This document shows, piece after piece, positions 12,750 to 37,722 of a stretch of DNA of 64,000 nucleotides. The translations under genes were made by a program, and so were the position numbers. The DNA is from Macrostomum hystrix (taxonomy: Eukaryota; Animalia; Platyhelminthes). The stretch lies in contig CATNEN010000033.1 in assembly GCA_950097015.1 (NCBI GenBank), positions 4,960,001 through 5,024,000 on the forward strand, given 5' to 3'. Each line of letters starts with the position of its first letter. Within the stretch, counting starts at the first letter, position 1. Below the pieces are notes generated by a model. It saw nothing but the letters and a program-made list of their open reading frames with translations, searched no databases and was not told where the DNA came from.

Positions 12750-13260
12750 CGCCCTCGACTCAGCATCGCCTTCGCCTCAGCATCGCCCTCGCCTAAGCAT
12801 CGCCCTCGCCTCAGCATCGCCCTCGACTCAGCATCGCCCCCGACTCAGCATCGCTCTCGCTTCAGCATCGCCCTCGCCTCAGCATCGCCCTCGCCTCAGC
12901 ATCGCCCTCGCCACAGCATCGCGCTCGCCTCTCCCACGCTTCGCCTCCGCCTTCGCCACAGCATAGCCCTCGACTCAGCATAGCCCTCGCCTCAACATCG
13001 CCCTCGCCTCAACATCGCCCTCGCCTCAACATCGCCCTCGCCTCAACATCGCCCTCGCCTCAACATCGCCCTCGCCTCAACATCGCCTTCGCCTCAACAT
13101 CGCCCTCGCCTCAGAATCGTCCTCGACTCAACATCGCCCTCGCCTCAGAATCGTCCTCGACTCAGCATAGCCCTCGCCTCAGCATAGCCCTCGCCTCAGC
13201 ATAGCCCTCGTCTCAACATCGCTCTCGCCTCAGCATCGCCCTCGACTCGCCCTAGCCTCA
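12750..13260. repeat. Minisatellite, 17-bp unit CAGCATCGCCCTCGCCT
   Basis: Direct inspection. Confidence 0.93.
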
Positions 13261-16125: not shown

Positions 16126-16914
16126 TTTATCCGCTGTAACAGACTCTAACAGTCTATATCTATTGTAGTGTCTTTACTATCTTTCTAGCTTATCTTTATA
16201 AATGTCTAGCTCGAACCTGTTTTTATGTGACCAAAGGGATTTAAGTCGCTAACAGACAATTAATCCTAATCCGTTCTTATTCAGTTCCAGTTCCAACCTG
16301 TCTGCTCCTCATTCCCTTATTTCCGGCTACCAAAAAACGATGAAAGTTGACTCAGTCTCCAAGAAACCCTGAAATTAACCTCCGGCATTTTTCGATCAAG
16401 CAGCAGCAGCAGCCACTCGCGAGCGAGTCCAAGCGAAATAAGCAGCTGCCCAGTCTCATGGCTTGCTGGTTCCGCTTAAGGGCCAACAACTTGCACTTTT
16501 AAAGTGACTTCTTGTCTGGGCATGATAAATTGTCTAAAAATAGCCCGCCGGCATCTTCCAGCTGGGAGGAGCTCTTCAGCCCACGCAAGCTATTCAGCTG
16601 CTGCTGCTGCTGCTGCGGCACGGCTCACTTGGCTTCAGAGAGGAGGGCCGCAGCTTGAAAAATAATGCGTCGAAAGGCAGAAAGTCTTGACAATGCAAAC
16701 AATGAGCGAGTGATTGGGTCGGCTGAGCGATCTCGCATGGGGCTGAGCGCGCGGGAGATGCACTGAAACGTGACCTGACGTTCTGGCGGAATTTCTCAAT
16801 GGGAGAACAATGATTTCTTTGTAAAGAAACTCACAGATCATGCCAGGATTGTTTGGAAGACAAGAGCGACTGAAGAGAAACAAGAAAGACAGACAAACAG
16901 GAATGTGGGATAAG

Positions 16915-18515
16915 TGGGTGGGAATGTGGCATAGACAAGGCGAGAATAGGGGATAAACAAGGGGGAATGTGGCATAGACAAGGGTAGAATGTGGCATAGA
17001 CAAGGGTAGAATGTGGCATAGACAAGGGTAGAATGTGGCATAGACAAGGGGAGAAAGTTAGATAAACAAGGGGAGAATTTTAGATAAACAAGTGGAGAAT
17101 TTTAGATAAACAAGGGGAGAATGTTAGATAAACAAGGGGAGAATGTTAGATAAACAAGGGGAGAATTTTAGATAAACAAGGGGAGAAAGTTAGATAAACA
17201 AGGGGAGAATTTTAGATAAACAAGGGGAGAATGTTAGATAAACAAGGGGAGAATTTTAGATAAACAAGGGGAGAATGTTAGATAAACAAGGGGAGAATGT
17301 TAGATAAACAAGGGGAGAATGTTAGATAAACAAGTGAAGAATGTTAGATAAACAAGTGGAGAATGTTAGATAAACAAGGGGAGAATTTTAGATAAACAAG
17401 GGGAGAATTTTAGATAAACAAGTGGAGAATGTTAGATAAACAAGGGGAGAATTTTAGATAAACAAGGGGAGAATTTTAGATAAACAAGGGGAGAATTTTA
17501 GATAAACAAGTGGAGAATGTTAGATAAACAAGGGGAGAATTTTAGATAAACAAGGGGAGAATTTTAGATAAACAAGGGGAGAATTTTAGATAAACAAGTG
17601 GAGAATGTTAGATAAACAAGGGGAGAATTTTAGATAAACAAGGGGAGAATGTTAGATAAACAAGGGGAGAATGTTAGATAAACAAGGGGAGAATGTTAGA
17701 TAAACAAGGGGAGAATGTTAGATAAACAAGGGGAGAATTTTAGATAAACAAGTGGAGAATGTTAGATAAACAAGGGGAGAATGTTAGATAAACAAGGGGA
17801 GAATGTTAGATAAACAAGGGGAGAATGTTAGATAAACAAGTGGAGAATGTTAGATAAACAAGGGGAGAATGTTAGATAAACAAGGGGAGAATGTTAGATA
17901 AACAAGGGGAGAATGTTGGATAAACAAGTGGAGAATGTTAGATAAACAAGTGGAGAATGTTAGATAAACAAGGGGAGAATGTTAGATAAACAAGGGGAGA
18001 ATGTTAGATAAACAAGGGGAGAATGTTAGATAAACAAGGGGAGAATTTTAGATAAACAAGTGGAGAATGTTAGATAAACAAGGGGAGAATTTTAGATAAA
18101 CAAGGGGAGAATGTTAGATAAACAAGGGGAGAATGTTAGATAAACAAGGGGAGAATTTTAGATAAACAAGGGGAGAATGTTAGATAAACAAGGGGAGAAT
18201 TTTAGATAAACAAGGGGAGAATTTTAGATAAACAAGGGGAGAATGTTAGATAAACAAGGGGAGAATTTTAGATAAACAAGGGGAGAATTTTAGATAAACA
18301 AGGGGAGAATGTTAGATAAACAAGGGGAGAATTTTAGATAAACAAGGGGAGAATTTTAGATAAACAAGGGGAGAATTTTAGATAAACAAGGGGAGAATTT
18401 TAGATAAACAAGGGGAGAATGTTAGATAAACAAGGGGAGAATTTTAGATAAACAAGGGGAGAATGTTAGATAAACAAGGGGAGAATGTTAGATAAACAAG
18501 GGGAGAATGTGGCAT
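16915..18515. repeat. Minisatellite, 22-bp unit GATAAACAAGGGGAGAATGTTA
   Basis: Direct inspection. Confidence 0.96.
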
Positions 18516-19609
18516 GGATTTGAAGAGTTTTGTTTAGGCAGGGGACAATTTAGCATGGTTTTAGGGCAGAGGGGGAGAGAGCAAGTTGCAAGCGGTTCGC
18601 GGCACCATCTCAGGCCGCCTTGAACTGTCTCCGCACTCTCCACGCAGCCAGTCAGCCGCATTCCTGCCAGTGCTCAGACTCCGATGGCTCAATCTCGATC
18701 CCCAGCTCGATTCGCATCCCCGCCAGCTGAAATGCCAGTCTGTCTGGCCAAGCGGCGGCTGCGCCGCAGGCGGGCGTCGGCGGCCCATGTTTTGGCCCCC
18801 ATATTGACAGACTGAGCTGCTCGGCCTATTGATTTCCAGTCTGAGCTGGTCTGTTGGCCCAGAATCCACTTTTCCTACTCTTGCCAAGTGCTCACGCATT
18901 TTTCTCCTCATCTTTGAGTTGTCAGGCGGCTTGTTGAGGCTTCCCCACCCTCCACAATCACAGCTCCTCCAGCCGGTGATTTCCTCTCGTTTTGCTACTT
19001 CGGGCTCTCCATCAACCAAAAGAGAGAGTTGACAGATTGATTGACAGATGATTGACTGAGAGATTGATAGAGAGATAGATATTTACTGATAGATTGACGG
19101 AAGGATGGGTAGCAGGGGGGCGGCAGTCGGTCAGTTTCCTTCATCTGACGAATCGCACACATCGCAGCTGACAGTCCCATTGCCCCCCCAAGCGAAACGG
19201 CCCGGCAAAGTCTGGCCCCGACCCGGCTGCACAATTAAAAATCGCGAAATCCCAAGCTAGAAAGAAATCCCAACTCCTCACTGCGTAACTACAGTCAACC
19301 CCCCTCCGCAGTGTCCCATGGCATTGCTCCGCAGAATCCTTAAATGAAGTCCGCAGCTGGTCGTGACGCGGTCCGCGGGGGCTGGGATGGCCCGGACTTG
19401 TCGGCCTGTTACACAGCGGAGTTAGACAAAGACTAGCGCCGCAGTCGAATTCACCCGCAAGCAAAAAATATGGCTTAGGCGGCCGCTGTCTCTCTTTCTG
19501 CCCCGCCCATTTCTGCCAGCTTTTTACAGTCATAATAATCCGATTTTTGTCAGGCCAAGTCAACAGTTTGGCATGGCCTGTTTGTTTATTCCTGCCTTTG
19601 ATTACCATC

Positions 19610-19785
19610 TCCTAATCTGCCTGCCACCACCTGTGCATCTCCTAATCTGCCTGCCACCACCTGTCCATCTCCTAATCTGCCTGCCACCACCTGTCCATCT
19701 CCTAATCTGCCTGCCACCACCTGTCCATCTCCTAATCTGCCTGCCACCACCTGTCCATCTCCTAATCTGCCTGTTACTACCTGTC
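19610..19785. repeat. Minisatellite, 30-bp unit CCATCTCCTAATCTGCCTGCCACCACCTGT
   Basis: Direct inspection. Confidence 0.93.
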
Positions 19786-20589
19786 CATCTCTCTCCTAAC
19801 ATTTTAGCCTCCCAGTATTTGTTTCTAAGCGGCCAACAGGTCGCAGTTTTTAAAGTGCAGAGTTTGAGCAAAGCAACTCACCGGCCCAGCGGAGAGCAGC
19901 ACACCTGGCAGTTGTCGGAGGACATTCGGCAGGGCTCGAGTGTTCAGTCAGTCTGCAGCGGCAAGGAAATGCTGAACGGCAGCCAGCAACAGCAGAGAGC
20001 GGCCCACAAGTTGGCTAATTTATATTCCAGCCAGACTGTCTTCTGTTAATAAGGCCTCCCCAACTTTGGTCCGGCCTGCCCCCAACCCCACCGACCTCTG
20101 CAAGTTACTGGGCCAGACTGTGCAGGAGGCAGAAACAGGACGGCGAGGGACTGGAGGCCCAGCCAATCAGGACTCGCGCTCAACTGACAGCCGCGGCCTG
20201 CAGAAAACTTAACACCGGTCTGTGGGGGGTGGAGGGGGAAAGTCAAATTGGGATTCCGTGTGCAGTTCTTGCCGTAGGACAAAATCCTGAAGGGGGTTAA
20301 GGGGAGTGCGGGATGAATAGGGAGTGAAATGGGTCGCCTGCAGCGGCCAGACACAATCAATGTTTGAAAAGCACCAGCCACTTGCAGCTGAGTCAGGCTA
20401 AACGGATGAGTGGCGGCAATTACTCTGTCAGAATGATGCTGTCAGATGCTGTCAGATGCTGTCAGATGCTCTGTACAATACCAGGCTGTCTGCCTGCTAG
20501 CCTGTTGCGATTCACTAATGCATAATTAATTTGCACCAGCGCACATCGTTCCTGATAGAAATCCCCTTAGTAAGGGGATTGTAGCCCCC

Positions 20590-20703
20590 ATAAGAGGTGT
20601 TAGAGTGCCGAACTAACGACTTAAAGGTCGGGGGTTCGATTCCTGACTTGAAGGTCGGGGGTTCGATTCCCGACTTAAAGGTCGGGGGTTCGATTTCCGA
20701 CTA
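20590..20703 (+). repeat. tRNA/SINE-head remnant with the T-arm/B-box segment triplicated (27-bp unit)
   Basis: CGACTTAAAGGTCGGGGGTTCGATTCC-like units at 20617, 20644 and 20671. Confidence 0.7.
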
Positions 20704-21087
20704 GATTAGAACAATTTGCATCCTTTATCAAGCCAATAAATCTGCATTGCTTGGGTGGGTGTGGCGTGGGTCCCTCCCAGTCCATGGACTGAACAGCCGT
20801 ACGTACAGAAAAATTATAGAAAAAACAGAGACAAAGATACAAAGCCAGAACCCTTTAAATAAAGACACTAGTGCTGTTATAAAAACGTAGCGCAAGCGCA
20901 GCAATGGTCTAGAATATTTTTGCAAAAAACTTTAGTAGAAGAAGCAGAAAAATTTGTAAAAAAAATCAAAACGACTGAATAAACAAATTCTGCGAGCCAG
21001 AATGAAATCTAGAAAGGGAATAACTATCTGGCACTGAGGCAAGACAAACAACTCGCTGTACAGTCTTCCGGTCTCTGCTCCTGCCAG

Positions 21088-21171
21088 CTAGAATCGGTGC
21101 GCGTGACCCATTGGCGCCAGCTCGTTCAAAGGACTGCGGACAATACGCTGCTGCTGCTGCTGCTGCGGCAT

Positions 21172-21224
<53 letters not shown>

Positions 21225-21231
21225 CACCAGG
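21088..21231 (-). CDS. ccm2: Alternative terminal exon 4b of the CCM2-like gene (PGE-Q17-MP-Q6-RIVRSPLNELAPMGHAHRF*)
   Basis: Phase-0 acceptor TTATTCGCAG|CCT at 21232/21231, 47 open codons to TAG 21090-21088. The last 8 aa are identical to exon 4a. Not in the supplied ORF track. Confidence 0.75.
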
Positions 21232-24200
21232 CTGCGAATAATGTCGCAAATGAATGAGACATTAACCTAATTTTTCCAGAACGGTTTGCACACTGAGAAC
21301 CAGAATATGACAGCAAAACACACTGTTCAGTCACTTGCAACACGAGATGACCAGAAAGAGGATCTCTGCATCAGTGAGCGGATCTGGGAATCAGTGAGGG
21401 AATCAGTGATGAGATCTGGGAGTCAGTGAGGGGATCTGGGAATCAGTGAGGGGAATCAGTGAGGGGATCTGCGAATCAGTGAGGGGAATCAGTGAGGGGA
21501 ATCAGTGAGGGGAATCAGTGAGGGGAATCAGTGATGGGATCTGGGAATCAGTGAGAGGAATCAGTGAGGGGAATCAGTGATGGGATCTGGGAATCAGTGA
21601 GAGGAATCAGTGAGGGGAATCAGTGAGGGGATCTGGGAATCAGTGAGTGGATCTAGGAATCAGTGGTGGGAATCAGTGAGAGGAATCAGTGAGGGGAATC
21701 AGTGATGGGAATCAGTGATGGGATCTGGGAGTCAGTGAGGGGATCTGGGAATCAGTGAGGGGAATCAGTGAGGGGAATCAGAGATGGGAATCAGTGAGGG
21801 GAATCAGTGATGGGATCTGGGAATCAGTGAGAGGAATCAGTGAGGGGAATCAGTGAGGGGAATCAGTGATGGGAATCAGTGATGGGATCTGGGAGTCAGT
21901 GAGGGGATCTGGGAATCAGTGAGGGGATCTGGGAATTAATGAGGGGATTTGGGATGGTGGCTGCTCAGTTAAAGGATCTGGGATTTCGGCCATGAGTAAG
22001 GAGATGTGGGATTTCGGCTGATCAGTGATTGCTTCGTTGAAATGTAAAGCAAGGAAAAGTGGGAAAACTGTGAGTGAGCGGACTCACCAGGGCGGCCGAT
22101 TGCTGCATGCCAGCCACCGCAGCGGCCGAGCTGTCATCAGCAGAGCAGGATCCGGCTCCGCTGTCATCGCGTGGCTCTTTCGAAGTCATGATGCTCGCAG
22201 GTATGGCTATGCTAGAGTATCTAATGGGCGTAGGTGCACCGATTAACTGAAATATCATTGTAGCCTCATTGAACTTTTGCTCTGGAGGCTACAATGAATG
22301 AGATGTGATGCAGTCTTATTCGAATAGAGGAATAGAGGCCATTCTCATGAGAGAATAGAGGCCATTCTCGTGAGGGAATAGAGGCCATTCTCGTGAGGGA
22401 ATAGAGGCCATTCTCGTGAGGGAATAGAGGCCATTCTCGTGAGGGAATAGAGGTCATTCTCGTGAGGGAATAGAGGCCATTCTCGTGAGGGAATAGAGGC
22501 CATTCTCGTGAGGGAATAGAGGTCATTCTCGTGAGGGAATAGAGGCCATTCTCGTGAGGGAATAGAGGCCATTCTCGTGAGGGAATAGAGGCCATTCTCG
22601 TGAGGGAATAGAGGCCATTCTCGTGAGGGAATAGAGGTCATACTCGTGAGGGAATAGAGGTCATTCTCGTGAGGGAATAGAGGCCATTCTCGTGAGGGAA
22701 TAGAGGCCATTCTCGTGAGGGAATAGAGGCCATTCTCGTGAGGGAATAGAGGTCATACTCGTGAGGGAATAGAGGCAATTCTCGTGAGGGAATAGAGGTC
22801 ATTCTCGTGAGGGATTAGAGATCATTCTCGTGAGGGAATAGAGGCCATTCTCGTGAGGGAATAGAGGTCATACTCGTGAGGGAATAGAGGCAATTCTCGT
22901 GAGGGAATAGAGGTCATTCTCGTGAGGGAATAGAGATCATTCTCGTGAGGGAATAGAGGTAATTCTCGTGAGGGAATAGAGGTCATACTCGTGAGGGAAT
23001 AGAGGCCATTCTCGTGAGGGAATAGAGGCCATTCTCGTGAGGGAATAGAGGCCATTCTCGTGAGGGAATAGAGGTCATACTCGTGAGGGAATAGAGGCCA
23101 TTCTCGTGAGGGAATAGAGGCCATTCTCGTGAGGGAATAGAGGTCATACTCGTGAGGGAATAGAGGCCATTCTCGTGAGGGAATAGAGGCCATTCTCGTG
23201 AGGGAATAGAGGCCATTCTCGTGAGGGAATAGAGGCCATTCTCGTGAGGGAATAGAGGCCATTCTCGTGAGGGAATAGAGGCCATTCTCGTGAGGGAATA
23301 GAGGCCATTCTCGTGAGGGAATAGAGGTCATACTCGTGAGGGAATAGAGGTCATTCTCGTGAGGGAATAGAGGCCATTCTCGTGAGGGAATAGAGGCCAT
23401 TCTCGTGAGGGAATAGAGGCCATTCTCGTGAGGGAATAGAGGTCATACTCGTGAGGGAATAGAGGCAATTCTCGTGAGGGAATAGAGGTCATTCTCGTGA
23501 GGGATTAGAGATCATTCTCGTGAGGGAATAGAGATCATTCTCGTGAGGGAATAGAGGTAATTCTCGTGAGGGAATAGAGGTCATACTCGTGAGGGAATAG
23601 AGGCCATTCTCGTGAGGGAATAGAGGCCATTCTCGTGAGGGAATAGAGGCCATTCTCGTGAGGGAATAGAGGTCATACTCGTGAGGGAATAGAGGCCATT
23701 CTCGTGAGGGAATAGAGGCCATTCTCGTGAGGGAATAGAGGTCATACTCGTGAGGGAATAGAGGTCATTCTCGTGAGGGAATAGAGGCCATTCTCGTGAG
23801 GGAATAGAGGCCATTCTCGTGAGGGAATAGAGGCCATTCTCGTGAGGGAATAGAGGTCATACTCGTGAGGGAATAGAGGCAATTCTCGTGAGGGAATAGA
23901 GGTCATTCTCGTGAGGGAATAGAGGCCATTCTCGTGAGGGAATAGAGGCCATTCTCGTGAGGGAATAGAGATCATTCTCGTGAGGGAATAGAGGTAATTC
24001 TCGTGAGGGAATAGAGGTCATACTCGTGAGGGAATAGAGGCCATTCTCGTGAGGGAATAGAGATCATTCTCGTGAGGGAATAGAGGCCATTCTCGTGAGG
24101 GAATAGAGGCCATTCTCGTGAGGGAATAGAGGTCATACTCGTGAGGGAATAGAGGCAATTCTCGTGAGGGAATAGAGGTCATTCTCGTGAGGGAATAGAG

Positions 24201-27200
24201 GCCATTCTTGTGAGGGAATAGAGGCCATTCTTGTGAGGGAATAGAGGTCATACTCGTGAGGGAATAGAGGCCATTCTTGTGAGGGAATAGAGGTCATACT
24301 CGTGAGGGAATAGAGGCCATTCTTGTGTGGGAATAGAGGTAATTCTCGTGAGGGAATAGAGGTCATTCTCGTGAGGGAATAGAGGTCATACTCGTGAGGG
24401 AATAGAGGCCATTCTCGTGAGGGAATAGAGGTCATACTCGTGAGGGAATAGAGGCCATTCTCGTGAGGGAATAGAGGCCATTCTCGTGAGGGAATAGAGG
24501 CCATTCTCGTGAGGGAATAGAGGCCATTCTCGTGAGGGAATAGAGGCCATTCTCGTGAGGGAATAGAGGCCATTCTCGTGAGGGAATAGAGGCCATTCTC
24601 GTGAGGGAATAGAGGCCATTCTCGTGAGGGAATAGAGGCCATTCTCGTGAGGGAATAGAGGCCATTCTCGTGAGGGAATAGAGGTCATTCTCGTGAGGGA
24701 ATAGAGGTCATTCTCGTGAGGGAATAGAGGTAATTCTCGTGAGGGAATAGAGGTCATACTCGTGAGGGAATAGAGGCCATTCTCGTGAGGGAATAGAGGC
24801 CATTCTCGTGAGGGAATAGAGGCCATTCTCGTGAGGGAATAGAGGTAATTCTCGTGAGGGAATAGAGATCATTCTCGTGAGGGAATAGAGGTAATTCTCG
24901 TGAGGGAATAGAGGTCATACTCGTGAGGGAATAGAGGCCATTCTCGTGAGGGAATAGAGGCCATTCTCGTGAGGGAATAGAGGCCATTCTCGTGAGGGAA
25001 TAGAGGCCATTCTCGTGAGGGAATAGAGGCCATTCTTGTGAGGGAATAGAGGTCATTCTCGTGAGGGAATAGAGGCCATTCTCGTGAGGGAATAGAGGCC
25101 ATTCTTGTGAGGGAATAGAGGTCATTCTCGTGAGGGAATAGAGATCATTCTCGTGAGGGAATAGAGGCCATTCTCGTGAGGGAATAGAGATCATTCTCGT
25201 GAGGGAAAGGAGTTGCTAAAATGACAAAGTGAAAACCAGAAGTGTCATTGAATGATTTAATTAATTGTACAATTTCACAAGACTGAATCCTGTAACATTT
25301 ATATTTGTATCTAGGCTAGACCTAGGGTCACAGTGAACACTTGAAGATTCAAAAAAAAGTTGCACATAAAAGAAGTGACACATGGTTTCCATAACAAGGT
25401 TTGAATATTAGCTTTGCAAATTAACAACAACAGAAACGAAACAAAGGAATGCTTGACAATGTCAAAAGAGTGTAAATTAGCTAAGATTAAGAAATTTTAA
25501 TAAGAATGAAAGCTGAATTTGAAAGATTATAAAGATTTCATGGTAATCAACTCACAGCCAGACAGGAAAATCATGCCTAAAATTACAATGATATTATAAT
25601 CAAGAAGTGTGAAAAATTATTCAAGAAGTCCAAATACTTGCTTTTAACAAATTTACAAGCTGATTCAAAAGGCTAAAATGAACACTAGAAAAACAAAATT
25701 TAAACTGACGCGAACTTTTGACATCACAGTGGATTAGGGATTAGAGAGATGAGAGGGTCGGTATATTGAGGGACTGGAGTGGGACTATATGGCCATGGAT
25801 TAACGTGCTGAAGTGGGATTATATGGCCATGGATTACCGTGCTGGAGTGGGATTATATGGCCATGGATTACCGTGCTGGAGTGGGATTATATGGCCATGG
25901 ATTACCGTGCTGGAGTAGGATTATATGGCCATGGATTACTGTGCTGGAGTGGGACTATATGGCCAGGGATTAACGAACTAGGATTGAGATTGTAAGGCCA
26001 GGGATTACCGGAGGGAGTGGGATTATATGGCGATGGATTAACGTGCTGGAGTGGGATTATATGGCCAGGGATTAAAAGACTGGAGTGGGATTATATGACC
26101 ATGGATTAACGTGCTGGAGTGGGATTATATGGCCAGGGATTAAAAGACTGGAGTGGGATTATATGACCATGGATTAACGTGCTGGAGTGGGATTATATGG
26201 CCAGGGATTAACAGACTGGAGTGGGAATATATGGCCAGGGATTAACAGACTGGAGTGGGATTATATGGCCAGGGATTAACAGACTGGAGTGGGATTATAT
26301 GGCCAGGGATTAACGGACTGGAGGGGGATTATACGAGTATTGTGGGATAATGGAAGCGCGAGAACTGCAAGTGGGATGATAAGATAGAATGGCAGGCGGA
26401 CCGGAGGAAGGAGACTGGGATCAGGGCTGGGATAAATCTAAGCGCAGCAGTGCCCAACTGAAATCCCAGTTAACTTTCGATCATGCACACTTAGAAGCGG
26501 TGCGCGTGACCCATCGGAGAGAATTCGTTGGCGGGAATCCGGCCGGTGTCCATTGGCGCCACCATGAAGGCGGGGTCGTCCAGCCCAGTGCCGTCAAGTC
26601 CGAGGTAGCGGCCCGACGGGCCGACGGAACGGCCGACAACCGAGGAGGCGGCCACTGACGAGACTGAGCGAGAGTAACTGGGCTGAGCGAACTGCTGCTG
26701 GCTCATGTCCAGCCTCTGAACCTGGAAAGATTATATGGGATGAGGCTAGCTGGGTGTGGGATGAGGCTAGCTGGGTGTGGGATGAGGCTAGCTGGGTGTG
26801 GGATGAGGCTTGATGGGTGTGGGATGAGGCTAGCTGGGTGTGGGATGAGGCTAGCTGGGTGTGGGATGAGGCTAGCTGGGTGTGGGATGAGGCTAGCTGG
26901 GTGTGGGATGAGGCTTGATGGGTGTGGGATGAGGCTAGCTGGACGTGGGATGAGGCTAGCTGGATGTGGGATGAGGCTTGATGGGTGTGGGATGAGGCTA
27001 GCTGGGTATGGGATGAGGCTAGCTGGGTGTGGGATGAGGCTAGCTGGGTGTGGGATGAGGCTTGATGGGTGTGGGATGAGGCTAGCTGGGTGTGGGATGA
27101 GGCTAGCTGGGTGTGGGATGAGGCTAGCTGGGTGTAAGATGAGGCTAGCTGGGTGTGGGATGAGGCTTGATGGGTGTGGGATGAGGCTAGCTGGACGTGG

Positions 27201-29647
27201 GATGAGGCTAGCTGGATGTGGGATGAGGCTTGATGGGTGTGGGATGAGGCTAGCTGGGTATGGGATGAGGCTAGCTGGGTGTGGGATGAGGCTAGCTGGG
27301 TGTGGGATGAGACTAGCTGGGTGTGGGATGAGGCTTGATGGGTGTGGGATGAGGCTAGCTGGGTGTGGGATGAGGCTTGATGGGTGTGGGATGAGGCTAG
27401 CTGGGTGTGGGATGAGGCTAGCTGGGTGTGGGATGAGGCTTGATGGATGTTGGATGAGGCTAGCTGGATGTGGGATGAGGCTTGATGGGTGTGGGATGAG
27501 GCTAGCTGGGTATGGGATGAGGCTAGCTGGGTGTGGGATGAGGCTAGCTGGGTGTGGGATGAGACTAGCTGGGTGTGGGATGAGGCTTGATGGGTGTGGG
27601 ATGAGGCTAGCTGGGTGTGGGATGAGGCTTGATGGGTGTGGGATGAGGCTAGCTGGGTGTGGGATGAGGCTTGATGGGTGTGGGATGAGGCTAGCTGGGT
27701 GTGGGATGAGGCTAGCTGGGTGTGGGATGAGGCTTGATGGATGTTGGATGAGGCTAGCTGGGTGTAGGATGAGGCTAGCTGGGTGTGGGATGAGCTTGAT
27801 GGGTGTGGGATGTGGGCATTGGCTAGACTACACGGCAGTACACCAGCGCACCTGAGCAACGATGGAGCCGAGGGCCTGATCCATGTCGATCTCGCTGGAG
27901 TCGCGACTGCGGACGCTGCTGGCGGTGCTGCCGATGCTGACCGAGCGGCTGTAGCCGGACGGTCGCAGCCCCCTGTCGTGCAGGAAGTCGTCGAAAGCCG
28001 CCTGGTCCCTGGCTGGAATGAAGGGCCGGAGGCCTAGCAGGAGGTGGCTGCGCTCGGCCGGGAACAGGCGCTCCAGCTGGGGCCTGACACTGCCAGAGAA
28101 GGAGGAGGCGCCGGAGGACCAGGACCTGAACAGCTGACCGAACAGTACCAGCTCCTGCTTGGTGAGGCTTGAGGCCAGGCTGCCAGCTAGGCTGCTGACC
28201 GCCTCCTGGGGACTGTCCCGCCTGTTGAACACCGGACTGCTGGTTGTCGATGTCACAGGGGTGGCGTTTGACTCCCCGCTGCCAGCGCCGGGCACGCCGA
28301 GAATTGAAGCGCCTGAAGCTGACGGAGCGCCGGAAGTTGTTGAAGCGGCGCCGCCCAGAGCCCGGTCGAAGAATTCCAGAGTGGCCTCCGTGTAGGCCAG
28401 CTGCAGCAGCTGACGGGCCACCGCGCAGGCCTCCTAGACAAAGGCAAAACAAGGAGTAACTTGCTGAAATTGATTAACGGCTTGGCCTCAGCACGTCATT
28501 TACGGTTGACAACCCCAACACCGGTTAGCCTGGTTGACATCCCCAACACAGGTTAGCCTGGTTGACATCCCCAACACCGGTTAGCCTGGTTGACATCCAC
28601 AACACCGGTTAGCCTGGTTGACATCCACAACACCGGTTAGCCTGGTTGACATCCACAACACCGGTTAGCCTGGCTGACAACCCCAGCACCGGTTAGCCTG
28701 GTTGACATCCCCAACACCGGTTAGCCTGGTTGACATCCTTAACACCGGTTAGCCTGGTTGACATCCACAACACCGGTTAGCCTGGTTTACATCCCCAACA
28801 CCGGTTAGCCTGGTTGACATCCACAACACCGGTTAGCCTGGCTGACAACCCCAACACCGGTTAGCCTGGTTGACATCCACAACACCGGTTAGCCTGGTTG
28901 ACATCCACAACACCGGTTAGCCTGGCTGACAACCCCAACACCGGTTAGCCTGGTTGACATCCACAACACCGGTTAGCCTGGTTAAGAGCATTTCCTTTCA
29001 CAGACTAACCTGAGCGTGAATCCTGGCATAGACAGCCATTGCGCAGAGCTGGCTAGTACCCGCAGCGTCAGGGCTGAAGTGCAGAGCCAGCAGGTGCCTG
29101 TCGGAGTCTCGAACGTAGGCGACAGCGAGTAGCTGGGAGACAGGCACCCTGAGCAGCACATCTGGCTGGGACGGCTGCTGCAGCTGCTGTTGCTGTTGCG
29201 GCGGCGTCGGCGGCGGCCGGCGCTCAAGCCTCACGCCCGACACGCTGAGGCTGAGCAGGGCGTCAACTGGCGGAGCTCTGGAGCCGCGGACACCGCGCTC
29301 GATTGAGTCTACCAAGCTGAGCAGGTAGGCCCGGTTGCTGATGTCCCGATTGCTGCGCACACCAGACAGGGAGCCCAGCAGGCGGACCGGCCACTCCAGG
29401 TAGGAGTCGATTAGCACGCTTGGATTGACCTGTTGCGTCGGGAATGGGAGAATTGGATGATGCGTTGGTTTGACAGATATGCTACTAGCATACTACTGCC
29501 AGTAATACAGTGGCCTCCGTGGCATCCTTTTTCTACCTGAAAGTCTGGCGGCGCCAGAACGATTCTGGCAGCCCTGAAGAAGCCGGCGCTGCTGCCTCCG
29601 CCGCTGCCGCCGCCTGTCAGACCCGCTGGCCAGAGGCGGTTCAGCAT
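21088..29647 (-). CDS. ccm2: CCM2/malcavernin-like PTB + harmonin-homology-domain scaffold protein
   Basis: Exons (minus): 29647-29537, 29429-29010, 28433-27852, then terminal exon 4a 26721-26491 (or 4b 21231-21088). All junctions are phase 0 GT-AG. PTB matches CCM2: SYLEWPVRLLGSL, LRVPVSQLLAVAYVRD, QLAYTEATLEFFDRAL. HHD matches: LLLGLRPFIPARDQAAFDDFL. Confidence 0.9.
21370..21950. repeat. Compound minisatellite GGGAATCAGTGAG / GGGATCT
   Basis: Direct inspection. Confidence 0.9.
22320..25205. repeat. Large minisatellite, 23-bp unit TTCTCGTGAGGGAATAGAGGCCA (about 125 units)
   Basis: Direct inspection. Confidence 0.97.
25770..26340. repeat. Minisatellite, 34-bp unit GGAGTGGGATTATATGGCCAGGGATTAACAGACT
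   Basis: Direct inspection. Confidence 0.92.
26745..27815. repeat. Minisatellite, 21-bp unit GGGATGAGGCTAGCTGGGTGT (ccm2 intron 3)
   Basis: Direct inspection. Confidence 0.96.
28515..28983. repeat. Minisatellite, 28-bp unit CCGGTTAGCCTGGTTGACATCCACAACA (ccm2 intron 2)
   Basis: Direct inspection. Confidence 0.95.
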
Positions 29648-29789: not shown

Positions 29790-30940
29790 CTAATCCCTGA
29801 TCTCAGCACCACTAATCCCTGATCTCAGCACTACTAATCCCTGATCTCAGCACTACTAATCACTGATCTCAGCACTACTAATCCCTGATCTCAGCACTAC
29901 TAATCCCTGATCTCAGCACTACTAATCCCTGATCTCAGCATTACTAATCCCTGATCTCAGCACTACTAATCCCTGATCTCAGCACTACTAATCCCTGATA
30001 TCAGCACTACTAATCCCTGATCTCAGCACTACTAATCACTGATCTCAGCACTACTAATCCCTGATCTCAGCACTACTAATCCCTGATATCAGCACTACTA
30101 ATCCCTGATCTCAGCACTACTAATCCCTGATCTCAGCACTACTAATCCCTGATATCAGCACTACTAATCCCTGATCTCAGCACTACTAATCACTGATCTC
30201 AGCACTACTAATCCCTGATCTCAGCACTACTAATCCCTGATCTCAGTACTACTAATCCCTGATCTCAGCACCACTAATCCCTGATCTCAGCACTACTAAT
30301 CCCTGATCTCAGCACTACTAATCCCTTATCTCAGCACTACTAATCCCTGATCTCAGCACCACTAATCCCTGATCTCAGCACTACTAATCCCTGATCTCAG
30401 CATTACTAATCCCTGATCTCAGCACTACTAATCCCTGATCTCAGCACTACTAATCCCTGATATCAGCACTACTAATCCCTGATCTCAGCACTACTAATCA
30501 CTGATCTCAGCACTACTAATCCCTGATCTCAGCACTACTAATCCCTGATATCAGCACTACTAATCCCTGATCTCAGCACTACTAATCCCTGATCTCAGCA
30601 CTACTAATCCCTGATATCAGCACTACTAATCCCTGATCTCAGCACTACTAATCCCTGATCTCAGCACTACTAATCCCTGATCTCAGCACTACTAATCCCT
30701 GATCTCAGTACTACTAATCCCTGATCTCAGCACCACTAATCCCTGATCTCAGCACTACTAATCCCTGATCTCAGCACTACTAATCCCTGATCTCAGCACT
30801 ACTAATCCCTGATCTCAGCACTACTAATCCCTGATCTCAGCACTACTAATCCCTGATCTCAGCACTACTAATCACTGATCTCAGCACTACTAATCCCTGA
30901 TCTCAGCACTACTAATCCCTGATCTCAGCACTACTAATGC
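29790..30940. repeat. Minisatellite, 22-bp unit CTACTAATCCCTGATCTCAGCA
   Basis: Direct inspection. Confidence 0.96.

Positions 30941-31862: not shown

Positions 31863-37722
<5,860 letters not shown>

What the first reader, a model, noticed from the sequence alone, without database searches (positions are those of the whole stretch)
21088..26721. CCM2-like gene has two alternative terminal exons, 5.4 kb apart, ending in the identical peptide PMGHAHRF*
Seen: exon 4a (26721-26491) ends IPANEFSPMGHAHRF-TAA. A second phase-0 acceptor at 21231 opens a 47-codon exon, PGE-Q17-MP-Q6-RIVRSPLNELAPMGHAHRF-TAG. Both fit the phase-0 donor at 27852. Upstream of NE-x-x-PMGHAHRF the two exons are unrelated (Ser-rich 76 aa versus polyQ 47 aa), and the shared codons differ synonymously (CCG/CCA, CGC/CGA, TAA/TAG). 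Inference: an old exon duplication in which selection kept only the C-terminal motif. That would mark an uncharacterised C-terminal binding motif on a CCM-complex scaffold, delivered on two different linkers. I know no such tail in vertebrate CCM2.
Basis: partly seen in the sequence, partly recalled or inferred. Interest (0 to 1): 0.78.

Follow-up and report, generated by a model that had tools for sequence, protein, structure and literature searches.

The report
Duplicated tail exon downstream of flatworm CCM2
A flatworm (Macrostomum hystrix) CCM2 scaffold gene is followed 5.3 kb downstream by a spare last exon that ends in the same short peptide; this exon is what remains of an old partial gene duplication that a second Macrostomum species also carries, and whether it is spliced onto CCM2 is untested.

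Summary
**Observation:** confirmed. On the minus strand, exon 4a (26721-26491) and a second phase-0 open frame, 4b (21231-21088), both end in PMGHAHRF-stop. The similarity covers 16 codons (R-x-P-x-N-E-[FL]-x-PMGHAHRF). Differences inside the 8-residue motif are synonymous only.

**Gene and genome:** the gene is a true CCM2 ortholog (PTB domain plus harmonin-homology domain, HHD). The genome is Macrostomum hystrix.

**New context from M. lignano:**
- Its CCM2 ends in the same PMGHAHRF.
- 4.9 kb further downstream, on the same strand, lies a 24-codon phase-0 terminal exon ending RSPVDELAPVGHMHRL-stop.
- That exon is preceded by an exon encoding a second, diverged HHD.
- Satellites flanking these exons are collinear between the two species.

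**Reading:** 4b is not a simple exon duplicate. It is the surviving last exon of a tandem partial duplication (HHD plus tail) at least as old as the species split. M. hystrix has lost the second HHD.

**Selection:** the 4b tail looks constrained (dN/dS about 0.1-0.2; neutral-drift P of 0.002-0.03).

**Distribution:** the tail is absent from 22 non-Macrostomum CCM2 homologs. AlphaFold2 predicts it to be disordered.

The scan had not noted this feature before.

The parts
29537..29647 (-). CCM2 exon 1 (37 codons, ATG at 29647; TTTCAG acceptor 18 nt upstream of the ATG, possibly an SL site)
   Evidence: 83% aa identity to M. lignano exon 1
29010..29429 (-). CCM2 exon 2 (140 codons), PTB domain
   Evidence: PDB 4wj7 malcavernin, E 3.3e-10
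27852..28433 (-). CCM2 exon 3 (194 codons), harmonin-homology domain; phase-0 donor CAG|GTGCGC
   Evidence: Pfam CCM2_C 7.3e-10; PDB 4ykc 5.3e-9
26736..27812 (.). 21-bp satellite filling intron 3
26491..26721 (-). Exon 4a (76 codons plus TAA), the conserved last exon of CCM2; 16-codon tail RIPANEFSPMGHAHRF at 26541-26494
   Evidence: The exon 3/4a junction and the tail are present in the M. lignano annotated protein P0037. dN/dS 0.23 against M. lignano
25773..26333 (.). 34-bp satellite (TAATCCCACT core) after exon 4a, positionally conserved with M. lignano
25240..25720 (-). AT-rich stretch with ATTAAA hexamers; likely 3' end region of the 4a mRNA (inferred)
   Evidence: read by eye only
22329..25207 (.). 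23-bp satellite, 125 copies
22088..22246 (-). Candidate 'exon X': tatttcag|TTA acceptor (SL type, phase 0), 53 open codons, CTG|GTGAGT donor (phase 0). It sits where M. lignano has its second-HHD exon. It shows no HHD similarity and no GC3 coding signature.
21370..21954 (.). 13/20/92-bp satellite (TCCCAGATCC core) upstream of 4b, matching the satellite in the M. lignano intron between the second HHD exon and its tail exon
21088..21231 (-). Exon 4b (47 codons plus TAG): PGE, a CAG/CAA run (21147-21222), then tail RSPLNELAPMGHAHRF at 21138-21091
20860..21040 (-). AT-rich stretch after 4b, 3'-UTR-like (inferred)
   Evidence: read by eye only

Best explanation
**What 4b is.** Exon 4b is the surviving, still-coding last exon of a 'second 3' unit'. 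This unit was created by a tandem partial duplication of the 3' half of CCM2 (HHD plus C-terminal tail) before M. hystrix and M. lignano diverged. M. lignano keeps both exons of the unit: a second HHD exon, a satellite-filled phase-0 intron, and a 24-codon tail exon. M. hystrix has lost the HHD part, and its tail exon has picked up a CAG-repeat polyQ run.

**What the tail is.** The tail, roughly R-[SI]-P-x-[NDK]-E-[LF]-[AS]-P-[MV]-G-H-[AM]-H-R-[FL]-COOH, is a Macrostomum-specific, disordered C-terminal peptide kept by purifying selection in all four copies. I infer that it is a docking motif that works together with the HHD scaffold.

**Shown:** gene identity, the duplication, the collinearity between species, and the selection signal.

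**Inferred:** how 4b is expressed. My estimates are:
- About 30%: an independently expressed downstream unit.
- About 25%: recently dead.
For: - **Gene identity:** PTB and HHD hits. The thiolase-BRCT-CCM2 gene order is shared with M. lignano locus L007.
- **Tail is the true C-terminus in M. lignano:** P0037 and P0003 end in ...KELSPMGHAHRF.
- **Second unit in M. lignano:** an HHD' open frame at L007 16393-16662 with donor TGG|GTAAGC (phase 0), and a tail exon at 18022-18096 with acceptor cgcgcag|GCT (phase 0). The tail exon lies 4.9 kb after the 4a stop, against 5.3 kb in the window.
- **Satellite collinearity:** the two longest shared words (11 nt) fall exactly in the positionally matching arrays, against a background of 6-8 nt.
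- **Age of the duplication:** outside a 21-codon gene-conversion block, HHD' is as far from M. lignano HHD (dS 1.2) as from M. hystrix HHD (dS 1.0). The interspecies dS over the same codons is 0.84.
- **Selection on the 4b tail:** 12-13 of 16 residues match the 4a tails. dN/dS is 0.09-0.19. Neutral drift over half the species distance gives this much conservation with P of 0.002-0.03. The upstream half of the tail (RSP..EL) resembles the M. lignano tails rather than the M. hystrix 4a tail, so recent conversion from 4a does not explain it.
- **Disorder:** the tail has pLDDT below 40 in an AlphaFold2 model of P0037.
- **Lineage restriction:** the tail is absent from 22 other CCM2 homologs.
Against: - No transcript evidence of any kind could be reached.
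- The selection tests rest on only 16 codons (about 11 synonymous sites).
- A tree of the four tails is unresolved. 4b is in fact nearest to the M. lignano 4a tail (9/48 nt differences, against 13/48 to the M. lignano second tail).
- The NCBI annotation of the M. lignano locus, as listed, calls no gene on the second unit.
- Exon X has no coding-type base periodicity.
- A 4b isoform would break the conserved C-terminal helix that spans the exon 3/4a junction.
Confidence: 0.6

Rival explanations
1. A single-exon duplication gives two alternative terminal exons, both spliced from the donor at 27852. One CCM2 scaffold then carries the same C-terminal peptide on two different linkers.
For: - The donor and both acceptors are phase 0.
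- The 4b tail is under constraint.
- With HHD' gone, attachment to CCM2 is the simplest way for the tail to keep its usual context.
- The 4b acceptor is a plain CAG type, not the [TC]TNCAG type enriched at SL sites.
Against: - The duplicated unit was HHD plus tail, not one exon.
- Phase compatibility is inherited, not diagnostic.
- Splicing must bypass exon 4a, its probable poly(A) region and three satellites.
- A better in-phase donor lies nearer, at 22087.
- The resulting isoform truncates a helix that recurs at the C-terminus of many CCM2 homologs.
Confidence: 0.3
2. 4b is the last exon of an independent downstream unit (exon X plus 4b in M. hystrix; HHD' plus tail exon in M. lignano). The unit is expressed from CCM2 read-through transcripts by spliced-leader trans-splicing, operon-style. 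Its product would be a small protein that mimics or competes with the C-terminal end of CCM2.
For: [quoted passage not shown]
- The same SL 3' end followed by GTAAG is present 19 times in this genome.
- The exon X acceptor TTTCAG is of the SL type and phase 0, so the SL AUG would open the frame. Its GTGAGT donor is phase 0 into 4b.
- The layout of exon, satellite intron and tail exon mirrors M. lignano.
- UniProt lists the M. lignano unit as a separate 83-aa model, P0008.
Against: - Exon X lacks a coding signature and any recognisable domain.
- In M. lignano the only SL-type acceptor near the start of HHD' would put the SL AUG out of frame (sequence).
- No gene is called there in the Mlig_3_7 annotation as listed.
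Confidence: 0.3
3. 4b is a non-functional relic. The second unit died in M. hystrix when the HHD' exon was lost, and the tail simply has not decayed yet, or was refreshed by gene conversion from exon 4a.
For: - HHD' is completely gone.
- A pure run of 14 CAG repeats looks young.
- Gene conversion between the two units is demonstrable in M. lignano: 21 codons with dS of 0.11.
- There is a 17-nt perfect core between 4a and 4b.
- The statistics rest on only 16 codons.
Against: - Changes assigned to the 4b lineage are about 5-6 synonymous against 1 conservative replacement (P of 0.001-0.003).
- The frame and the stop position are kept.
- Synonymous sites between 4a and 4b are near saturation (pS 0.69), which argues against recent conversion.
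- The upstream half of the 4b tail differs from 4a but matches the M. lignano state.
Confidence: 0.22

Closest known systems
Vertebrate CCM2 / malcavernin (PDB 4wj7 PTB; 4fqn, 4ykc HHD; the HHD binds the MEKK3 N-terminus, PMC4526114)
   Same: Same domain order: PTB, linker, harmonin-homology domain, then a short acidic C-terminal helix. The matches are significant by sequence.
   Different: The vertebrate CCM2 representatives P0012, P0024 and P0032 end right after that helix (...DQDSA). Macrostomum CCM2 continues for about 60 more residues and ends in PMGHAHRF. None of the 22 non-Macrostomum homologs has this tail.
M. lignano 'CCM2_C domain-containing protein' A0A1I8IDC5 (P0008) and the read-through gene models A0A1I8G9P7 (P0038) and A0A1I8F1R8 (P0036)
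   Same: It lies downstream of CCM2 on the same strand and ends in a tail of the same type (RSPVDELAPVGHMHRL-stop) on a short phase-0 last exon.
   Different: It still has an exon for a second HHD, which M. hystrix lacks. It has no polyQ run. Its tail is more diverged (11/16 residues identical to 4b).
Tandem exon or partial gene duplication giving alternative 3' ends or mutually exclusive exons (general phenomenon, from my own knowledge)
   Same: Homologous coding pieces in tandem on one strand, with the intron phase preserved.
   Different: Only the last 16 codons remain homologous, and alternative use has not been shown. The parent of the duplicate started in mid-exon, so it did not inherit an acceptor.
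C-terminal PDZ-binding motifs, classes I-III (from my own knowledge)
   Same: A conserved extreme C-terminus on a disordered tail, ending in a hydrophobic residue (F or L).
   Different: Position -2 is His in all four tails, not S/T, hydrophobic or D/E. The conserved block (16 residues) is much longer than a PDZ ligand.
Downstream genes of SL trans-spliced operons in Macrostomum (PMC8629364)
   Same: A promoterless unit on the same strand after a gene, separated largely by repeats; an SL-type acceptor is present at exon X.
   Different: The raw distance is 4-5 kb, and no SL reads were available to check.

Membership tests
CCM2 / malcavernin | N-terminal PTB domain | tested here: met
   Exon 2 against PDB 4wj7 malcavernin, E 3.3e-10, residues 1-131. 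The AlphaFold2 model of the M. lignano ortholog has a confident fold at residues 40-210.
CCM2 / malcavernin | C-terminal harmonin-homology domain (Pfam CCM2_C, PF16545) | tested here: met
   Exon 3: 39.3 bits against a cut-off of 27.3, E 7.3e-10. PDB 4ykc and 4fqn at E 5e-9 to 1.5e-8.
CCM2 / malcavernin | Orthology with an annotated CCM2 of a relative (synteny) | tested here: met
   M. lignano BOX15_Mlig011054g1 (P0037): 83-88% aa identity in exons 1-3 and 74% in exon 4a. The thiolase-BRCT-CCM2 gene order is the same.
Tandemly duplicated alternative terminal exons | Two homologous exons in tandem on the same strand | tested here: met
   62 nt at 73% identity, 12/16 residues identical, with the stop at the same position. 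Homology is limited to the tail.
Tandemly duplicated alternative terminal exons | Both acceptors compatible in phase with one upstream donor | tested here: met
   All are phase 0. This is inherited from the parent intron, so it is weak evidence.
Tandemly duplicated alternative terminal exons | Transcripts that use each exon alternatively | not testable with these tools
   No RNA data could be reached. The word search with exon 4a found nothing. The only transcript-based model available, from M. lignano, uses 4a.
SL trans-spliced downstream (operon-type) gene | The genome has an SL RNA, and the unit begins at an unpaired acceptor of the SL type | tested here: inconclusive
   An SL ending in AUG is present. 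The exon X acceptor TTTCAG fits [TC]TNCAG, but the 4b acceptor TCGCAG does not. No SL reads were available.
Canonical PDZ-binding C-terminus (classes I-III) | Position 0 hydrophobic and position -2 S/T, hydrophobic or D/E | tested here: not met
   The tails end A-H-R-F or M-H-R-L. Position -2 is His in all four.
Neutral pseudo-exon / relic | Substitution pattern without coding constraint | tested here: not met
   dN/dS 0.09-0.19. P(5 or fewer of 13 changes non-synonymous) is 0.004 if both copies are neutral and 0.04 if only 4b is neutral. The drift simulation gives P of 0.002-0.03. The sample is small.

The most novel reading that the evidence does not exclude
Macrostomum has evolved a lineage-specific C-terminal docking peptide on CCM2 that works together with the harmonin-homology domain. 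It also keeps a promoterless second copy of that module: HHD plus tail in M. lignano, tail only in M. hystrix. The second copy would be expressed by SL trans-splicing or alternative 3' processing. It would act as a small decoy or regulator of the CCM2-kinase scaffold, that is, a microProtein born from a partial duplication.
Probability: 0.15. Interest if true: 0.6.

Novelty: new variant of a known kind. Interest (0 to 1): 0.36.

Why it matters
If the tail is a real docking motif, it marks an unknown partner of the CCM2 scaffold in a regeneration model genus. The retained second unit would then be a natural experiment: the tail with its own HHD (M. lignano) or the tail without one (M. hystrix). 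It also shows how a partial tandem duplicate can persist for a long time (dS about 0.7-1) by keeping only a 16-residue C-terminus. On the practical side, several M. lignano database models are fused or misnamed because predictors splice out the stop codon at the GT inside the motif.

Tried and rejected
- **Word searches:** exon 4a alone found nothing. Exon 3 alone found only two fragmentary M. lignano models because of the length filter.
- **Exact look-ups:** The look-up of encoding contigs for P0001 and P0002 found nothing on record.
- **Second HHD in M. hystrix:** tblastn across window 18000-27000 and Smith-Waterman alignment of the two unique segments both stayed at noise level. The idea that 4b has a hidden HHD exon is rejected.
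- **Paralog on contig C10:** rejected as a real paralog. It is identical to the window gene except for homopolymer insertions, and it sits at a contig end.
- **Intramolecular docking of the tail:** not supported. The tail has pLDDT below 40 in the AlphaFold2 model, although the alignment had no depth there.
- **Resolving 4b orthology from the four 48-nt tails:** too short. The four-point sums are 22, 24 and 26 differences.
- **G|GTCAC inside the motif as a real donor:** considered, because two M. lignano gene models use it. It is probably a predictor artefact, since C at +3 does not fit the GT[GA]AG consensus.
- **Poly(A) signals:** read by eye only. There is no calibrated signal for this species, so they carry no weight.
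- Exons were searched one by one by reference. Full-length analyses used natural M. lignano database proteins.


Full report
**1.
- On the minus strand, 26721-26491 translates to 76 residues ending ...RIPANEFSPMGHAHRF, followed by TAA.
- 21231-21088 translates to PGE, 17 Q, MP, 6 Q, then RIVRSPLNELAPMGHAHRF, followed by TAG.
- Exon 3 ends at 27852 with CAG|GTGCGC. Both downstream acceptors and this donor are phase 0.
- A degenerate DNA pattern for the octapeptide occurs only at these two places in the window, with none expected from shuffles. The same holds for the whole assembly.
- Local blastn shows that only 62 nt can be aligned between the two regions (73% identity, with a 17-nt perfect core). 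The flanks are unrelated.
- The shared block is 16 codons, not 8 to 12.
- Half of 4b is a CAG/CAA run that is open in all frames, so the 47-codon frame is not in itself remarkable.

**2. Gene and organism.**
- The gene model is:

| Exon | Coordinates (minus strand) | Codons |
|---|---|---|
| 1 | 29647-29537 | 37 |
| 2 | 29429-29010 | 140 |
| 3 | 28433-27852 | 194 |
| 4a | 26721-26491 | 76 plus stop |

- All introns are phase 0.
- Exon 2 matches the malcavernin PTB structure 4wj7 (E 3.3e-10).
- Exon 3 matches Pfam CCM2_C (E 7.3e-10) and the HHD structures 4ykc and 4fqn.
- The assembly size and contig count (220,453,370 bases in 42 contigs) equal those published for Macrostomum hystrix (PMC10468722).
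- The nearest proteins are from M. lignano.
Every search used single exons by reference or natural database proteins.

**3. The tail is real, conserved and lineage-specific.**
- The annotated M. lignano protein BOX15_Mlig011054g1 (P0037, 465 aa) has the same exon 3/4a junction (...IVAQ|VQRLDMSQQQF...). It ends ...RSPVKELSPMGHAHRF. So does P0003.
- Two older models (P0001, P0002) read ...PMVTRTDSN, which is the same DNA with one G missing.
- Between the two species dS is about 0.7 in all four exons, and dN/dS is 0.12-0.23.
- None of 22 CCM2 homologs from other animals found by the exhaustive search ends in anything similar. Many end shortly after a short helix of the type ...D-x-x-L-x-x-I-x-x-x-[VI]-x-x-[LM]-[ED].
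- In an AlphaFold2 model of P0037 that helix (residues 378-403) spans the exon 3/4a junction. The last 60 residues, including the tail, have pLDDT below 40.
- The tail is therefore a disordered extension peculiar to Macrostomum, as far as this sample shows.
- No paper in the held library mentions both CCM2 and flatworm.

**4. What 4b is: the second 3' unit in M. lignano.**
- Older M. lignano gene models (P0038, P0036) read on past the 4a tail into a second HHD and a second tail. P0008 is that piece alone.
- The syntenic M. lignano locus L007 (thiolase, BRCT gene, CCM2, in the same order as in the window) shows the anatomy:
  - The 4a stop is at 13151.
  - Satellites and an AT-rich stretch follow.
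  - An open frame at 16393-16662 encodes a diverged HHD (HHD') and ends in TGG|GTAAGC, phase 0.
  - A 28-bp satellite fills the next intron.
  - A 24-codon exon at 18022-18096 (acceptor cgcgcag|GCT, phase 0) ends ...DTGRSPVDELAPVGHMHRL, followed by TGA.
- That tail exon lies 4.9 kb after the 4a stop. In the window, 4b lies 5.3 kb after it.
- The read-through models arise because predictors use the GT of ATGG|GTCAC, inside the motif, as a donor.

**5. Orthology of the interval.**
- Comparing every satellite array of the two loci, the two longest shared words (11 nt) fall exactly in the positionally matching pairs:
  - the array upstream of 4b (21887-21370, TCCCAGATCC core) with the M. lignano intron array 16706-17974;
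  - the array after 4a (26333-25773, TAATCCCACT core) with the M. lignano arrays after its 4a.
- The background is 6-8 nt, with one stray 10 (blastn agrees).
- Outside a 21-codon block that has clearly been homogenised by gene conversion in M. lignano (dS 0.11), HHD' is about as far from the M. lignano HHD (dS 1.2) as from the M. hystrix HHD (dS 1.0). Both are at least the interspecies distance over the same codons, 0.84.
- I conclude, at about 75% confidence, that one tandem partial duplication of the 3' half of CCM2 predates the split of the two species, and that 4b is the M. hystrix counterpart of the M. lignano tail exon.
- The four 48-nt tails cannot resolve this on their own. 4b is 9 differences from the M. 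lignano 4a tail and 13 from each of the other two.

**6. M. hystrix has lost the second HHD.**
- tblastn with the M. lignano unit against window 18000-27000 finds only the two tails.
- Nucleotide alignment of HHD' to the two unique segments scores at shuffle level.
- In the slot where HHD' should be, there is a 53-codon open frame at 22246-22088. It has a TTTCAG acceptor and a consensus CTG|GTGAGT donor, both phase 0 and in frame with 4b.
- This frame lacks the GC3 excess of the real exons (0.53/0.60/0.58 by codon position, against GC3 of 0.76-0.80) and has no recognisable domain. I call it exon X and treat it as a candidate only.

**7. Is 4b still coding?**
- Across the 16 codons, 4b keeps 12, 13 and 11 residues relative to the three other tails. 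dN/dS is 0.09, 0.13 and 0.19.
- By parsimony, the 4b lineage carries about 5-6 synonymous changes (counting TAA to TAG) and one conservative replacement. P is 0.001-0.003 under neutrality.
- 5 or fewer non-synonymous changes out of 13 between 4a and 4b has P of 0.004 if both copies are neutral, and 0.04 if only 4b is neutral.
- A drift simulation over half the interspecies distance keeps the frame, the stop and this much identity in 0.2-3% of runs.
- The upstream half of the 4b tail (RSP..EL.P) matches the M. lignano state rather than the M. hystrix 4a tail (RIP..EF.P). Synonymous sites between 4a and 4b are near saturation (pS 0.69). Recent conversion from 4a is therefore not the cause.
- These tests rest on very few sites. 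I take them as good but not conclusive evidence of translation.

**8. How it is expressed remains open.** Three routes fit the data.
- **(a) Cis-splicing from CCM2 exon 3, directly or through exon X.** In its favour: the phases match, a plain CAG acceptor is present, and the tail would stay in its usual context. Against it: splicing must bypass exon 4a and its likely 3' end. It must also compete with the better nearby donor at 22087, and the isoform would cut the conserved terminal helix.
- **(b) An independent downstream unit.** Macrostomum uses an SL that ends in AUG, and many genes lie in repeat-padded operons (PMC8629364). The same SL 3' end is present in this genome. The exon X acceptor is of the SL type and in phase.
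- **(c) A recently dead relic.**
- I put these at roughly 40%, 30% and 25%. In both species the tail is paired with an HHD, or was until the HHD' loss, while the Ser-rich linker and the terminal helix were dropped from the second unit. I read this as a hint that the tail and the HHD work together. In vertebrates the HHD binds MEKK3 (PMC4526114).

**9. Verdict.** The phrase 'two alternative terminal exons of one gene' is one of two live options, not a finding. This is a new variant of a familiar process, partial tandem duplication supplying a second 3' end, on a well-known scaffold protein. It is moderately interesting, mainly for the unexplained conserved tail.

Noticed in passing
G000:C10:3347600-3351707 (L004, L009): There is a second copy of CCM2 exons 2-4a, with its intron satellite, at the very end of contig C10. 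It is identical to the window gene except for single-base homopolymer insertions (for example GGG to GGGG inside the motif). It is probably an unpolished residual haplotig rather than a paralog.
   Followed up: partly
G000:C39:12667898-12753120 and scattered sites: Besides 19 exact copies of the M. lignano-type SL 3' end (...CAATTTATTGCATG|GTAAG), there is a roughly 927-bp tandem array of more than 70 copies carrying a variant...CTCTCTTTTTTGCATG|GTAAG. This could be a second spliced-leader gene family in M. hystrix.
   Followed up: no
window 26736-27812, 28504-28983, 29790-30938; L007 10172-12829: Introns 2 and 3 of CCM2 are each filled by a different short-period satellite in M. hystrix, with a further array upstream of exon 1. 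M. lignano introns 1-3 also carry arrays. The arrays in the interval downstream of 4a keep recognisable cores at matching positions despite dS of about 0.7.
   Followed up: partly
L007 11940-12010 vs 16540-16610: There is a gene-conversion tract of about 21 codons between the M. lignano CCM2 HHD and the downstream HHD' (dS 0.11 inside, about 1.2 outside).
   Followed up: yes
UniProt A0A1I8FRY9, A0A1I8FF61, A0A1I8FII2, A0A1I8FJX2, A0A1I8FRQ6, A0A1I8F1R8: M. lignano CCM2 fragments and fusions carry unrelated names: Autophagy-related protein 13, Polyprotein, Integron gene cassette protein, TOMM20-like protein 1, CHAT domain protein. Several are fused to the upstream BRCT gene or read through the stop, using a GT inside the tail motif as a donor.
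   Followed up: partly
window 29536, 29009, 27851 vs L007 10130, 10961, 12156: The three CCM2 donors of M. hystrix (GTAGAA, GTTAGT, GTGCGC) all depart from the GT[GA]AG consensus, while the three orthologous M. lignano donors are all GTGAGC.
   Followed up: no
window 20617-20702: Three 27-bp repeats on the plus strand contain a tRNA T-arm-like GGTTCGATTCC. This may be a SINE or tRNA-derived fragment, about 0.4 kb downstream of 4b.
   Followed up: no
window 31863-36080 (-): A 1405-codon uninterrupted open frame encodes a multi-BRCT (TopBP1-like) protein immediately upstream of CCM2. The gene order thiolase-BRCT-CCM2 is conserved with M. lignano.
   Followed up: partly
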